Shown here one piece after another: positions 12,732-61,436 of a stretch of 64,000 bases of DNA (the stretch's first letter is position 1; every line of letters begins with the position of its first letter). The stretch covers positions 124,001 through 188,000 of IMG/VR virus record IMGVR_UViG_3300020380_000001; one strand, written 5' to 3'. The position numbers and the translations under genes are program-made. The notes under the pieces are model-generated. The model ran no database searches. It saw only the letters and a list, made by a program, of their open reading frames with translations, and was not told the origin of the DNA.

Positions 12732-14013
12732 GCACATGACTGACAATACCCCATACGTACCCGATCCATCTGAATTTGCATCCCTCTTTTTAGGCATTGC
12801 GATGAACTTGAAAGAGCGCAAAAAGCAACAAGATGCTGACTATGTTGATGTGTCTAAATTCATTACCATGAATGATCGTGATAATGATTTTGACATATCA
12901 AAACGATCGTCCATGCACTTCTTAGGACACGATGCTCCGAATGGTTTTGATATCCTCCCGGCTGTTGATTTAGGCGGCTTAGCCAACACAGATAAAAACG
13001 GGTACGATATGTTTATGCAGGTAGATGGCAGAATTGTCCCAGCCGAATTAAAGTCAACATCACTTAGCCCAACTGACCGTAATAACGAATATTGCCTAGA
13101 CGTAATGTCGCGACTATGCAAGCGTGTGGCATCCGGTGATTCATTTACGTTAGTGCCGCTTGAACAAGCACTAACTATCAGTTTTAAAATAAAAACCCAC
13201 TCAACCATGATGTTGAAACACTGCGACTGTTACTTGTACTTATTTGACGGTGACGCTCGTTCAGACGTTATCCAAATTTGGAAAGTTGCCGGTGATCGTA
13301 TCCTGGCATTCTTAGAAGAAAGACTTAACTTTGACAGCAAGGGGCGTTTAAAAGGCGGTTCCGGCGCGGTGAGTGTTCCTTTACAGTTCTTCATAGACAA
13401 CGGCATCGTGGTTCCGCCAATGTCAAGTAAGCAGTACGGTTGGGAAAATGCGCTTAAAGTATTACGTGAGCACTGTGACTATGACTTCAGAACAGATCAG
13501 CCAGGCCAGAAAAATGGCGAACAATTTATCAAGTATTTGTCGCCGGCACTAGATAAAGAAACAAACGAAACTTTTAAACAGCTACTAGAGCACCGCGGTC
13601 CGTCTGAGTACGAAACTAAGTTTGCAATTAACAAGCTACTTACTGAACGCGGACTAGACACCAGTCGTGTAATTATGACAGTAGTTAACAAAACCAAAGA
13701 CGGCAAGCGTATGTACTTTATGTCCGGTGCTCTACAAAAGAAAGGCAAACCCGGTGACGTGTTAATGATGCTTATGTACGAAGACATCTCCCAAAAAACA
13801 TATATGGTGGTTGTACCATACCGTGAGTATGTCACTACGTATAACGGCCGCCTCTACCTTAATCAAGCTGACGGCACTTATGCACCTCGCCCAAGACAAT
13901 CTAAAAGAGGCGATACTCTTGAAATGTATAACTTTCTTGTAAAAGATGTACATGACGCACTTGAAAAAATTGAAGTGTATTTGAACGAAGAAGCACCTGC
14001 TTCTGATAAATAA
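12730..14013 (+). CDS. putative PD-(D/E)xK-fold endonuclease
   Basis: GYDMFMQVDGRIVPAELKST fits a D-x(n)-(E)xK nuclease core; likely start 12736. Confidence 0.45.
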   Translation: MHMTDNTPYVPDPSEFASLFLGIAMNLKERKKQQDADYVDVSKFITMNDRDNDFDISKRSSMHFLGHDAPNGFDILPAVDLGGLANTDKNGYDMFMQVDGRIVPAELKSTSLSPTDRNNEYCLDVMSRLCKRVASGDSFTLVPLEQALTISFKIKTHSTMMLKHCDCYLYLFDGDARSDVIQIWKVAGDRILAFLEERLNFDSKGRLKGGSGAVSVPLQFFIDNGIVVPPMSSKQYGWENALKVLREHCDYDFRTDQPGQKNGEQFIKYLSPALDKETNETFKQLLEHRGPSEYETKFAINKLLTERGLDTSRVIMTVVNKTKDGKRMYFMSGALQKKGKPGDVLMMLMYEDISQKTYMVVVPYREYVTTYNGRLYLNQADGTYAPRPRQSKRGDTLEMYNFLVKDVHDALEKIEVYLNEEAPASDK

Positions 14014-45323: not shown

Positions 45324-45446
45324 GGGTGGAGAGTAAGGAATCGAACCAAATCCGCCGGCTTGGGTTTAATGAAAACTTGCTGTTAGAATACTAATACAGT
45401 ATTCGTTTCATTCGGGGCCGGAGTGCAACCATTACACTTCATCTCC
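45324..45446 (-). ncRNA. tRNA-like gene with structured insert in the anticodon loop (degenerate scaffold)
   Basis: D arm GTGT/GCAC, anticodon stem CCGGC/GCCGG, TTCGATT T loop, imperfect acceptor, ends ACCC; insert carries the 27-nt core at 45378-45404. Confidence 0.65.
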
Positions 45447-45466
45447 ATATTCGCTATTATACGTTT

Positions 45467-50238: not shown

Positions 50239-50359
50239 TGGTAGGGAGTGCAGGACTCGAACCTGCGACCAACGGCTTATCAGGCAAAAAGGATATGCTG
50301 TTAGAATACTAATACAGTATTCATTTTTACGTTGCTCTACCCAACTGAGCTAACTCCCT
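50239..50359 (-). tRNA. tRNA-Ile(GAT) interrupted by a 44-nt insert (50286-50329) between positions 29 and 30
   Basis: Removing the insert gives a perfect 77-nt cloverleaf: AGGGAGT/ACTCCCT, GCTC/GAGC, ACGGC-CTGATAA-GCCGT, GCAGG-TTCGAGT-CCTGC, ACCA. Confidence 0.85.
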
Positions 50360-60763: not shown

Positions 60764-61174
60764 CTATTTAGCATGTCGTTCAAGGTCTGTTCTATTATCT
60801 TTATCAACTGAATGCTTGGCTCTGCGTGCTTCTGATTCAGAGCGCATACTCACCAAGTGCTTGCCCGGCGTACCCAATACTACATCGTGGATTGGTTCTA
60901 TGCGAATAGTGTTTACCATTTGGCGATAGCGCTTTTTAGTGTCGTCGCTTAACTCAGTATACTCTGTGCGAGTACCGAAAAAGAAATTAGAGCGCTTGGT
61001 AGGTGACCCGGCAATTAGCCACTTTAGATGATTTACTGTCTTACCGATTCTTTCAACTAAATGCCCGTAGTCAGACCCTGCGACTATTTCACTATTATCC
61101 AATAAAAACTGGGTGTCGCCATTCTCTAAAGTGAACACAACAACATATATTTTAGCTGCATGCATTTTGACCAT
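60764..61174 (-). CDS. hypothetical protein
   Basis: 136 aa. Confidence 0.7.
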   Translation of the reverse strand: MVKMHAAKIYVVVFTLENGDTQFLLDNSEIVAGSDYGHLVERIGKTVNHLKWLIAGSPTKRSNFFFGTRTEYTELSDDTKKRYRQMVNTIRIEPIHDVVLGTPGKHLVSMRSESEARRAKHSVDKDNRTDLERHAK

Positions 61175-61194
61175 GCCAGAACCTCATTATAAAA

Positions 61195-61346
61195 TGGACG
61201 AGCCGCCGGGATTCGAACCCGGGAATACAGAATACTTCCGCTATTTGCATTTCGCTTGGCATTGTCTGTACCTTTAAACCCCTCATACCAATACTTGGCT
61301 TAAAGAACCGATGCACCGATTCTTAAAGTTGCAAGGAGTCAGCCCG
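61195..61346 (-). ncRNA. 152-nt tRNA-like ncRNA with canonical T arm and expanded core
   Basis: CGGGCTG/CGGCTCG acceptor (G3-U70 type pair), CCGGG-TTCGAAT-CCCGG, TCCA end; starts 10 nt after tRNA-Trp. Confidence 0.65.
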
Positions 61347-61356
61347 ATTGTTAAAA

Positions 61357-61436
61357 TGGCGCAGGTGTAGGGAGTCGAACCCTCAAGTCTCTCGACACGG
61401 TTTTGGAGACCGCTTTGCTCGCCAATGCGCACCTAC
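61357..61436 (-). tRNA. tRNA-Trp(CCA) with unusual variable-arm hairpin
   Basis: GTAGGTG/CACCTGC, GCGGT-CTCCAAA-ACCGT, G73, CCA; GTC-GAGA-GAC extra arm, weak D stem. Confidence 0.8.

What the first reader, a model, noticed from the sequence alone, without database searches (positions are those of the whole stretch)
61195..61346. 152-nt tRNA-like RNA with canonical T arm and G3-U70-type pair, co-transcribed after tRNA-Trp
Seen: the acceptor CGGGCUG/CGGCUCG-U-CCA and a textbook T arm enclose about 120 nt. This core has a 9-bp AAGAAUCGG/UCGGUUCUU hairpin, CCAA/UUGG, and no recognisable anticodon arm. Established: G3-U70 is the AlaRS identity element, and RNase P and CCA enzymes recognise the acceptor/T domain. 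Inference: a processed tRNA mimic. A tRNA scanner would probably call only a 3' fragment or pseudo-tRNA.
Basis: partly seen in the sequence, partly recalled or inferred. Interest (0 to 1): 0.66.

Follow-up and report, generated by a model that had tools for sequence, protein, structure and literature searches.

The report
Oversized tRNA-shaped RNA in a jumbo phage
An uncultivated marine jumbo phage carries, inside its tRNA gene cluster, a conserved 152-base RNA gene with the two ends of a tRNA but an unrelated 117-base interior; it most resembles phage T4's "species 1" RNA, whose function is still unknown after 50 years.

Summary
On the minus strand, 61346 to 61195, a 7-bp acceptor stem (with G3.U70), a textbook T arm, a discriminator base and an encoded CCA enclose 117 nt. 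This interior has no D arm and no anticodon loop. The element starts 10 nt after an aberrant tRNA(CCA). tRNA scanners and Rfam do not call it.

The only relatives found are two near-identical 307-311 kb marine phage genomes. There the RNA is 98% identical, like the neighbouring tRNAs, and similarity collapses right after the CCA.

The closest known thing is T4 rnaC (species 1 RNA). It shares the niche in the tRNA cluster, in two T4 relatives directly after tRNA-Trp, and the same arrangement of helices and junction lengths. Covariance models of each find the other as best hit, but the scores overlap ordinary tRNAs. The interiors show no sequence similarity above shuffles.

I read it as a processed, non-decoding tRNA mimic: a new variant of the rnaC kind. 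No covariation test was possible. Charging with alanine is possible but untested. Cysteine identity is unlikely because the discriminator varies. tmRNA, Y RNA, an intron-bearing tRNA and a host-tRNA fragment were tested and rejected.

The parts
61195..61346 (-). Whole tRNA-shaped RNA, 152 nt (RNA position p = 61347 - window coordinate)
   Evidence: single copy in the 306.5-kb genome
61340..61346 (-). Acceptor 5' strand CGGGCUG (RNA 1-7); U at -1
61199..61205 (-). Acceptor 3' strand CGGCUCG (RNA 142-148); G3.U70 and U6.G67 wobbles
   Evidence: mean pair probability 0.95
61195..61198 (-). Discriminator U149 (C in the relative), then encoded CCA
61206..61222 (-). T arm CCGGG-UUCGAAU-CCCGG (RNA 125-141), preceded by a single spacer C124
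   Evidence: probability 0.99
61278..61339 (-). P2 domain in the D-arm position: closing helix ACUCCUU/GAGGGGU (RNA 8-14 / 63-69) starts directly after the acceptor and encloses two hairpins
   Evidence: 0.94
61299..61328 (-). P2a hairpin (RNA 19-48): 9 bp AAGAAUCGG/UCGGUUCUU, extended by CUU/AAG across a U.U mismatch
61288..61298 (-). P2b hairpin CCAA-GUA-UUGG (RNA 49-59)
   Evidence: 0.83
61273..61277 (-). Single-stranded linker UUAAA (RNA 70-74)
   Evidence: aligned to the A-rich linker of T4 rnaC by both models
61224..61272 (-). P3 arm in the anticodon-arm position (RNA 75-123): 8 bp GGUACAGA/UCUGUAUU, a 2-nt bulge, 4 bp, then a 23-nt poorly paired apex; no 7-nt anticodon loop
   Evidence: natural variants A80G (A-U to G.U) and C93U
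61347..61356 (-). 10-nt spacer between the upstream CCA and the RNA; identical in the relative
61357..61436 (-). Upstream 80-nt aberrant tRNA(CCA): weak D arm, long variable arm, G.A at the base of the T stem, encoded CCA
   Evidence: 100% identical in the relative

Best explanation
This is a real gene for a stable, non-decoding, tRNA-shaped small RNA of the same kind as phage T4 species 1 RNA (rnaC). Inferred mechanism: it is transcribed within the long tRNA/small-ORF transcript of the cluster. Host RNase P cuts at U(-1)/C1, because the acceptor and T arm stack into the minihelix that the enzyme recognises. The 3' side is trimmed back to the encoded CCA. The product is a 152-nt four-way-junction RNA. 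Its acceptor/T-arm half looks like a tRNA to tRNA-binding proteins. Its enlarged P2 and P3 arms replace the D and anticodon arms, so it cannot decode. It would then act through that mimicry, occupying or being acted on by host or phage factors that read the acceptor/T-arm/CCA end. Shown here: the anatomy, single copy, position in the cluster, conservation at tRNA level, and the resemblance to rnaC. Inferred: transcription as part of the cluster transcript, both processing steps, stability, and any binding partner.
For: The anatomy is recovered by an unconstrained fold. Chance pairing at the expected start is 0.007. The element sits 10 nt after a tRNA-like gene ending in CCA and about 20 nt before the next ORF's start codon, with all genes on one strand. 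Nearly all of this phage's tRNAs also encode CCA. Against the 310-kb relative the RNA is 98% identical, the tRNAs 96-100% and upstream ORFs 92-97%. Identity drops to 50-70% immediately after the CCA. Two of the three substitutions lie in predicted pairs and keep them (A-U to G.U; C-G to U.G). An ORF that overlaps the RNA (61152-61316) runs into a 14-nt indel in the relative, so it is not coding. Contigs from 3 metatranscriptome runs in 2 studies carry the locus contiguous with tRNA-Leu. T4 rnaC has the same topology, supported by covariation at 22 of 46 pairs. Both have no nucleotide between acceptor and P2, an A-rich linker of 5-8 nt, a long P3, and 1 nt before the T arm. T4 rnaC also lies in the tRNA cluster, directly after tRNA-Trp in Karamvirus CW742 and Erwinia phage COW86c. 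The T4-family model's only hit at E<=0.1 in this 306-kb genome is this RNA (19.2 bits, E 0.02). This RNA's model's only hit in the whole T4 genome is rnaC (30.1 bits, E 2e-6). That score and phiR1-RT rnaC (27.3) exceed the best of 706 kb of tRNA-rich viral DNA (24.2). T4's cluster transcript is the precursor of the tRNAs and of species I and II RNAs (PMC2330249).
Against: There is no end mapping, and the metatranscriptome contigs may be read-through mRNA or DNA carry-over. The fold is not significantly more stable than shuffles (z -1.5). No covariation test is possible, because only two near-identical alleles exist in every collection searched. Homology to rnaC is unproven. Other rnaC members score 17.7-24.7 bits with this RNA's model, within the range of ordinary tRNAs. 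The T4-family model gives tRNA-Arg 16.6 against 19.2 for this RNA. The interiors align no better than shuffles (p 0.02-0.8). The T4-family signature motifs are absent. The function of rnaC is itself unknown (PMC3014915, PMC9697503, PMC12685909), so the downstream mechanism is conjecture.
Confidence: 0.6

Rival explanations
1. It is an alanine-accepting RNA. AlaRS charges it through G3.U70, and the charged form is the active species, as a tmRNA-like rescuer, an aminoacyl donor or a sink for AlaRS or EF-Tu.
For: G3.U70 is flanked by G2-C71, G4-C69 and C5-G68, so positions 2-5 and 68-71 read GGGCU/GCUC. From my own knowledge of the E. coli sequences, this matches tRNA-Ala and tmRNA acceptor stems. 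AlaRS charges minihelices and tmRNA on the strength of G3.U70 alone (established knowledge; review PMC9976931). CCA is encoded and kept in both alleles.
Against: The discriminator is a pyrimidine and differs (U versus C) between near-identical phages, whereas AlaRS prefers A73. The first pair is C1-G72, not G1-C72. ARAGORN's tmRNA mode finds nothing even at a lowered threshold. Rfam tmRNA matches only the T arm, at 14.6 bits against a cut-off of 47. The only open frame ending in a stop (RNA 74-106) has no alanine-rich tail (read from the sequence). The phage encodes no SmpB. T4-family rnaC members have A-U or G-C at 3:70 and no encoded CCA.
Confidence: 0.15
2. It is a decaying tRNA gene, or a tRNA wrecked by insertions, with no function of its own. 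It is kept only because the divergence sampled is too small.
For: This phage carries other insertion-bearing or aberrant tRNA genes: a tRNA-Ile with a 44-nt intron, a tRNA-Gly-like gene with a 50-nt insertion, and the aberrant tRNA(CCA) next door. Overall divergence from the only relative is low, so conservation has little statistical power.
Against: The T loop, T stem, all 7 acceptor pairs and the CCA are intact. There is no remnant of a D arm or an anticodon loop. ARAGORN finds no tRNA using this acceptor, with introns allowed, even at a lowered threshold. No internal segment is a repeat found elsewhere in the genome, unlike the tRNA-Ile insertion. The interior folds into well-supported helices. 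T4 shows that an RNA of this shape can be a genuine stable product.
Confidence: 0.13
3. It is only a cis-acting processing signal. The tRNA-like ends recruit RNase P and 3' trimming to cut the polycistronic transcript and set the 5' end of the downstream mRNA. The excised RNA is a by-product.
For: The 3' end lies about 20 nt before the start codon of the next ORF, just ahead of its GAGG ribosome-binding motif. tRNAs alternate with small ORFs throughout the region. tRNA-like elements that define ends of neighbouring RNAs are known, for example mascRNA/MALAT1 (established knowledge).
Against: A minihelix or an ordinary tRNA would suffice. A conserved 117-nt structured interior is unnecessary for this role. 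The sequence downstream of the CCA is the least conserved part of the region.
Confidence: 0.1
4. It is the 3' fragment of a host tRNA (an attP-like remnant) plus a chance upstream complement.
For: A lone T arm with a 3' acceptor strand and CCA is what phage attachment sites in tRNA genes look like. A chance partner is expected 0.058 times in the 95-260 nt range.
Against: The 28-nt 3' end occurs in only two Streptomyces contigs among 185,579 species genomes, there inside an odd 69-nt tRNA-like call, and in no plausible marine host. The pairing partner sits exactly where the next RNA of the cluster should start (0.007 by chance). The genome is a 306-kb phage with direct terminal repeats, not a prophage.
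Confidence: 0.03

Closest known systems
Phage T4 rnaC (species 1 RNA, 139 nt) and its family in Tevenvirinae (740 phage records)
   Same: The 5' and 3' ends form a 7-bp acceptor-like stem. A canonical T arm abuts the 3' strand. There is no D arm and no anticodon loop. A large P2 domain starts directly after the acceptor, followed by an A-rich single-stranded linker, a long P3 hairpin and 1 nt before the T arm. Both have a U discriminator. Both lie inside the tRNA cluster on the same strand, next to tRNA-Trp in some members. Neither is in Rfam or called by tRNA scanners. The two covariance models find each other as best hit.
   Different: Outside the tRNA-like ends there is no sequence similarity above chance. 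The family motifs are absent: CGAGGA...GGCCU at the base of P2, the GCGUCAAC loop of P3 and the GUACAA tail. Here P2 is a three-way junction with two hairpins instead of one long irregular hairpin. P3 is 49 nt instead of about 26. CCA is encoded here, while T4 types have UACAA. The 3:70 pair is G.U here but A-U or G-C in the T4 family. The host phage is a 306-kb marine jumbo phage whose DNA polymerase is at most about 41% identical to any named phage.
tmRNA tRNA-like domain
   Same: G3.U70 acceptor with the GGGCU/GCUC context, a T arm, no canonical D stem, and an encoded CCA.
   Different: It is 152 nt against roughly 360 nt. It has no tag reading frame, no pseudoknots and no long helix joining the two ends. 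ARAGORN and Rfam do not call it, and the phage has no SmpB.
Insertion- or intron-bearing phage tRNA genes (Lak megaphages, PMC6784885; this phage's tRNA-Ile; Aeromonas phage Aeh1)
   Same: Over-long tRNA-like genes in phage tRNA clusters that default scanners miss.
   Different: This RNA has no recoverable cloverleaf.
Bacterial YrlA / Y RNAs
   Same: Non-coding RNAs that contain a tRNA-like module with a T arm.
   Different: In Y RNAs the ends form the Ro-binding helix and the tRNA-like part is internal. The Rfam YrlA score is 13.5 against a cut-off of 69. The phage has no Ro/TROVE protein.

Membership tests
T4 rnaC (species 1 RNA) family | 5' and 3' ends pair into a 7-bp acceptor-like stem, with a canonical T arm directly 5' of the 3' strand | tested here: met
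   T4 family structure with covariation
T4 rnaC (species 1 RNA) family | Junction signature: no nucleotide between acceptor and P2, an A-rich linker of several nt, a long P3 hairpin, 1 nt before the T arm; no D arm or anticodon loop | tested here: met
   This RNA: 0 / 5 nt / 8+4 bp / 1 nt. T4 family: 0 / about 8 nt / 10 bp / 1 nt.
T4 rnaC (species 1 RNA) family | Located in the phage tRNA gene cluster, same strand, adjacent to tRNA genes | tested here: met
T4 rnaC (species 1 RNA) family | Family sequence motifs (CGAGGA...GGCCU, GCGUCAAC loop, GUACAA tail) and detectable sequence homology of the interior | tested here: not met
   Motifs absent. Local alignment of the interiors is no better than shuffles (p 0.02-0.8).
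T4 rnaC (species 1 RNA) family | Covariance-model match clearly above ordinary tRNAs | tested here: inconclusive
   T4-family model on this RNA: 19.2 bits against tRNA-Arg 16.6. This RNA's model on T4 rnaC: 30.1; phiR1-RT: 27.3; other members: 17.7-24.7; tRNA background up to 24.2.
T4 rnaC (species 1 RNA) family | Excised from the tRNA precursor transcript as a stable RNA | not testable with these tools
   Only contig-level metatranscriptome presence. For T4 see PMC2330249 and PMC9697503.
tmRNA | Tag reading frame with resume codon and stop, pseudoknots, and a call by ARAGORN or Rfam | tested here: not met
   frames read
tmRNA | G3.U70 acceptor plus T arm plus CCA | tested here: met
Canonical tRNA, including one with an intron | D arm, 5-bp anticodon stem with 7-nt loop, and a scanner or Rfam tRNA call | tested here: not met
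   With introns allowed at a lowered threshold, ARAGORN gives only a spurious 205-nt call that borrows the neighbouring gene.
YrlA / Y RNA | Ro60 (TROVE) partner and a match to the Rfam model | tested here: not met

The most novel reading that the evidence does not exclude
A phage-encoded, enlarged tRNA mimic that host AlaRS does charge, through its tmRNA-like G3.U70 acceptor. It would work off the ribosome. For example, it could act as a decoy or sponge for host defence enzymes that attack the acceptor/CCA end or aminoacyl bond of tRNAs, or as an alanyl donor. It would be one member of a widespread, unannotated class of 120-150-nt acceptor/T-arm RNAs in large phages: T4 rnaC, a 149-nt candidate in Vibrio phage 2.275.O, and this one.
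Probability: 0.1. Interest if true: 0.8.

Novelty: new variant of a known kind. Interest (0 to 1): 0.5.

Why it matters
T4's species 1 RNA has been known since the 1970s and still has no function. It has been treated as a peculiarity of T-even phages. An RNA with the same architecture and the same place in the tRNA cluster now appears in a very distant marine jumbo phage, with an unrelated interior. This suggests the shape itself is what selection keeps: tRNA ends plus two enlarged arms. It gives a second, contrasting example with an encoded CCA and an alanine-type acceptor for functional tests. It also shows that standard annotation (tRNA scanners, Rfam) is blind to this class, so its true spread in phages is unknown.

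Tried and rejected
- **Close DNA relatives among named phages:** none found. The 1039-aa neighbouring protein also has no match.
- **Exact and degenerate 3'-end patterns in IMG/VR:** these returned only T4-type rnaC, ordinary tRNAs and the one close relative.
- **Composite pattern TAAGCCRAGTA...TYGG...T loop, shared by T4 and this RNA:** it hit nothing else in IMG/VR. The shuffle test shows the shared 11-mer is within chance, so I do not use it as evidence of homology.
- **Metagenome scan with the P2/linker block plus T loop:** it returned only the two known alleles, plus unrelated tRNA-containing or tRNA-derived sequences.
- **This RNA's model on other phages:** it was run on five jumbo phages or contigs related by DNA polymerase, and on KVP40, Aeh1, RB49, RB43, T5, Acinetobacter phage 133 and Salicola SCTP-2. 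Apart from T4 rnaC, every hit was tRNA-sized or an insertion-bearing tRNA.
- **T4-family model on the same phages:** only marginal tRNA-sized hits, which were not inspected.
- **Anchoring on the upstream tRNA(CCA):** the pattern was too generic (117+ ordinary tRNA-Trp loci). It served only as a tRNA background for this RNA's model.
- **tmRNA, Y RNA and phage CCA-adding-enzyme ideas:** the phage has no SmpB, TROVE or PolyA_pol domain.
- **attP/host-tRNA fragment:** rejected.
- **Mosaic of mobile mini-repeats:** no internal segment recurs in the genome.
- **Neighbouring ORFs:** no informative families. The downstream ORF gave only a sub-threshold T4-like Y01A match.
- **Not used or not needed:** the large protein searches were not used.

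Full report
**Setting**

The window is bases 124001-188000 of a 306.5-kb virus record with direct terminal repeats. The phage has a T4-type family B DNA polymerase that is at most about 41% identical to any named phage. The nearest are the jumbo phages Atu_ph07 and Phosso, Vibrio phage 2.275.O and the Rak2-like group. Sequencing runs that hold the locus are marine metagenomes.

The genome carries 23-27 tRNA genes on the minus strand, interleaved with small ORFs. Nearly all of them encode their CCA.

**The observation**

Reading the minus strand from 61346 to 61195:
- The acceptor is CGGGCUG (1-7) paired with CGGCUCG (142-148). It has five Watson-Crick pairs, G3.U70 and U6.G67.
- The T arm is CCGGG-UUCGAAU-CCCGG (125-141).
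- U149 and CCA follow.

An unconstrained fold gives exactly this frame. It also gives the named 9-bp hairpin and the CCAA/UUGG hairpin. Helix probabilities are 0.8-0.99.

- A 7-bp helix, ACUCCUU/GAGGGGU, starts directly after the acceptor and closes the two hairpins into one domain (P2).
- A 49-nt arm (P3, 75-123) sits where an anticodon arm would be, one nucleotide before the T arm.

The total energy is not significantly below shuffles (z -1.5), so thermodynamics alone proves little.

A partner for the 3' strand is expected by chance 0.058 times anywhere at 95-260 nt. It is expected only 0.007 times within 10 nt of where the next RNA after the upstream CCA should begin. My own scan of the genome for T arm plus acceptor recovers the tRNAs and this element. 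In the 95-260 nt range it also gives one intron-bearing tRNA and three chance secondary partners of ordinary tRNAs.

ARAGORN and Rfam call nothing here. Only the T arm gives sub-threshold tmRNA and mascRNA matches.

**The neighbour**

The "tRNA-Trp" 10 nt upstream (61357-61436) is itself odd. It has a weak D arm, a long variable arm and a G.A at the base of the T stem. ARAGORN calls it only at a lowered threshold, and Rfam matches only the tRNA-Sec model at 32 bits. It is the only CCA-anticodon gene in the genome.

**Conservation**

Only one other lineage holds the RNA. It is a 310.7-kb IMG/VR genome (also present as CEUD01013717.1) whose DNA polymerase is 99% identical.

The RNA differs at three positions:
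- A80G turns an A-U pair of P3 into G.U.
- C93U lies in a weak apical pair.
- The discriminator changes from U to C.

The CCA is kept.

| Feature | Identity to the relative |
|---|---|
| 152-nt RNA | 98% |
| Surrounding tRNAs | 96-100% |
| Upstream ORFs | 92-97% |
| 20 nt after the CCA | 50% |
| Next two ORFs | about 70% |

The conserved block therefore ends at the RNA's 3' end. An ORF that overlaps the RNA (61152-61316) runs into a 14-nt indel in the relative, so it is not coding.

A third allele, with C93U alone, appears in another marine DNA run. This divergence is too small for a covariation test. Every attempt to find more distant copies failed.

**Expression**

Contigs from three metatranscriptome runs in two studies carry the locus, in the relative's allele. 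One 540-nt contig spans tRNA-Leu to the RNA's 3' end, and one 1,326-nt contig spans the whole region. This agrees with a long transcript through the cluster. Contigs give no ends, and DNA carry-over cannot be excluded.

On the coding strand nearby, the scan found only a weak promoter-like site inside the downstream ORF and a weak terminator-like site inside the upstream ORF.

**What it is not**

- **Not a tRNA with an intron.** With introns allowed, ARAGORN recovers this phage's 121-nt tRNA-Ile at default settings. For this RNA it gives only a spurious 205-nt call that borrows the neighbouring gene.
- **Not a tmRNA.** ARAGORN's tmRNA mode makes no call. No plausible tag frame exists: the only frame ending in a stop, RNA 74-106, has no alanine-rich tail. 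The phage has no SmpB.
- **Not a Y RNA.** The YrlA score is 13.5 bits against a cut-off of 69, and the phage has no TROVE protein.
- **Not a host-tRNA fragment.** The 28-nt 3' end occurs only in two Streptomyces contigs among 185,579 species genomes.
- **Not assembled from repeats.** No internal segment recurs in the genome.

**Closest known thing: T4 rnaC**

T4 annotates rnaC (species 1 RNA, 139 nt) at the end of its tRNA cluster. An alignment of six diverse family members gives a consensus structure with compensatory changes at 22 of 46 pairs. The structure reads as follows:
- an acceptor-like stem formed by the two ends;
- a long P2 arm starting immediately after the acceptor;
- an A-rich linker;
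- a 10-bp P3 hairpin;
- one nucleotide;
- a canonical T arm;
- a U discriminator.

This RNA has the same topology and the same unusual junction lengths. A tRNA has 2, 1 and 4-5 or more nucleotides at the corresponding junctions. Both of these RNAs have 0, 5-8 and 1.

In Karamvirus CW742 and Erwinia phage COW86c, rnaC lies directly after tRNA-Trp(CCA). In phiR1-RT it lies directly before it. Here the RNA follows the tRNA(CCA)-like gene.

A model built from the T4 family finds this RNA as its only hit at E<=0.1 in the 306-kb genome (19.2 bits, E 0.02). A model built from this RNA finds rnaC as its only hit in the T4 genome (30.1 bits, E 2e-6). It also aligns phiR1-RT rnaC end to end (27.3 bits). 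Both scores are above the best ordinary tRNA in 706 kb of tRNA-rich viral DNA (24.2 bits).

**Limits of that comparison**

- The T4-family model gives tRNA-Arg 16.6 bits, and its alignment to this RNA skips the true 5' strand.
- Other rnaC members score 17.7-24.7 bits with this RNA's model, inside the tRNA range. Part of T4's high score comes from a coincidentally identical T stem, which is not conserved within the T4 family.
- With the acceptor strands and T arm removed, the interiors align no better than dinucleotide shuffles (p 0.02-0.8).
- The T4-family signature motifs are missing.

I therefore claim the same kind of RNA and leave common descent open, at roughly one chance in three. Rfam has no family for rnaC. 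Its function is stated to be unknown in PMC3014915, PMC9697503 and PMC12685909. PMC2330249 states that the T4 cluster transcript is the precursor of the eight tRNAs and of species I and II RNAs.

**Mechanism**

The most likely account is as follows, and all of it is inferred:
- Transcription runs through the cluster.
- RNase P cleaves at U(-1)/C1. A U at -1 and an NCCA tail are favourable features by established knowledge of bacterial RNase P.
- The 3' side is trimmed back to the encoded CCA.
- A tRNA-shaped RNA accumulates that cannot decode.
- It acts by presenting an acceptor/T-arm/CCA face to tRNA-binding factors.

**Charging with alanine**

Whether it is charged is open. Positions 2-5 and 68-71 read GGGCU/GCUC with G3.U70. 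From my own knowledge this is the tRNA-Ala and tmRNA acceptor context. AlaRS is known to charge minihelices on that basis.

Against this, the first pair is C-G and the discriminator is a pyrimidine. The discriminator also changes between near-identical phages. That argues against cysteine identity (U73) and against strong selection on any synthetase identity.

**Verdict**

This is a real, conserved, unannotated tRNA mimic. It is a new variant of the T4 species 1 kind. The anatomy and context are solid. Processing, stability, homology and function remain untested.

Noticed in passing
window 50239-50359, minus strand: A 121-nt tRNA-Ile(GAU) gene with a 44-nt insertion in the anticodon arm or loop. 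It has a perfect acceptor, canonical D and T arms, A73 and CCA. ARAGORN calls it at default settings only when introns are allowed, and Rfam and default ARAGORN miss it. The genome also has an uninterrupted tRNA-Ile(GAU). The locus is 96% identical in the 310-kb relative.
   Followed up: partly
window 45324-45447, minus strand: A tRNA-Gly(CCC)-like gene with a 50-nt insertion. Its core 27 nt, a hairpin GAAUACU-GUAUU-AGUAUUC plus flank, is identical to the core of the tRNA-Ile insertion 5 kb away. This suggests a small mobile intron-like element that targets tRNA anticodon arms. The T stem and acceptor of this copy are imperfect.
   Followed up: partly
L116 (Aeromonas phage Aeh1, NC_005260, about 96384-96505 and a second gene about 270 nt away): The cultured T4-like phage Aeh1 has two tRNA genes with 33-nt and 49-nt insertions. 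One carries a hairpin GAAUCU-GAUUA-AGAUUC that loosely resembles the insertion hairpin of this phage. Introns in phage tRNAs were previously reported as enigmatic in Lak megaphages (PMC6784885).
   Followed up: no
window 61357-61436, minus strand: The only tRNA(CCA) of the phage is aberrant. It is 80 nt, with a weak D arm, a long variable arm and a G.A at the base of the T stem. Rfam matches only the tRNA-Sec model at 32 bits. It is 100% conserved in the relative.
   Followed up: partly
own genome outside the window: 189501-189597 (minus), 194154-194238, 195686-195770, 196567-196658, and 12992-13062 (plus): A 97-nt suppressor-type tRNA with anticodon UUA lies between two tRNA-Ser genes. Several tRNAs are unusually long: Glu 85 nt, Lys 85 nt, Asn 92 nt. 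An uncalled 68-nt element with acceptor, T arm and CCA lies on the plus strand far from the cluster. No tRNA-Phe or tRNA-Tyr was called. I did not test whether the phage reads UAA as sense.
   Followed up: no
Vibrio phage 2.275.O (MG592671.1) 191773-191921, 211223-211358, 171224-171342: A 149-nt element with acceptor and T arm but no D arm lies 19 nt before tRNA-Leu; it is a possible further rnaC-like RNA with no encoded CCA. A tRNA-His-like gene (G-1, C73, CCA) has a roughly 60-nt insertion in the variable region. There is also a 119-nt tRNA-like gene. None is called by ARAGORN.
   Followed up: partly
window 61167-61194 compared with L003 2977-3000: Similarity to the sister phage breaks exactly at the 3' end of the RNA. 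The downstream 136-aa ORF (sub-threshold T4-like Y01A match) is only 71% identical in protein, while the polymerase is 99%. tRNA-like genes appear to mark the edges of exchanged modules.
   Followed up: partly
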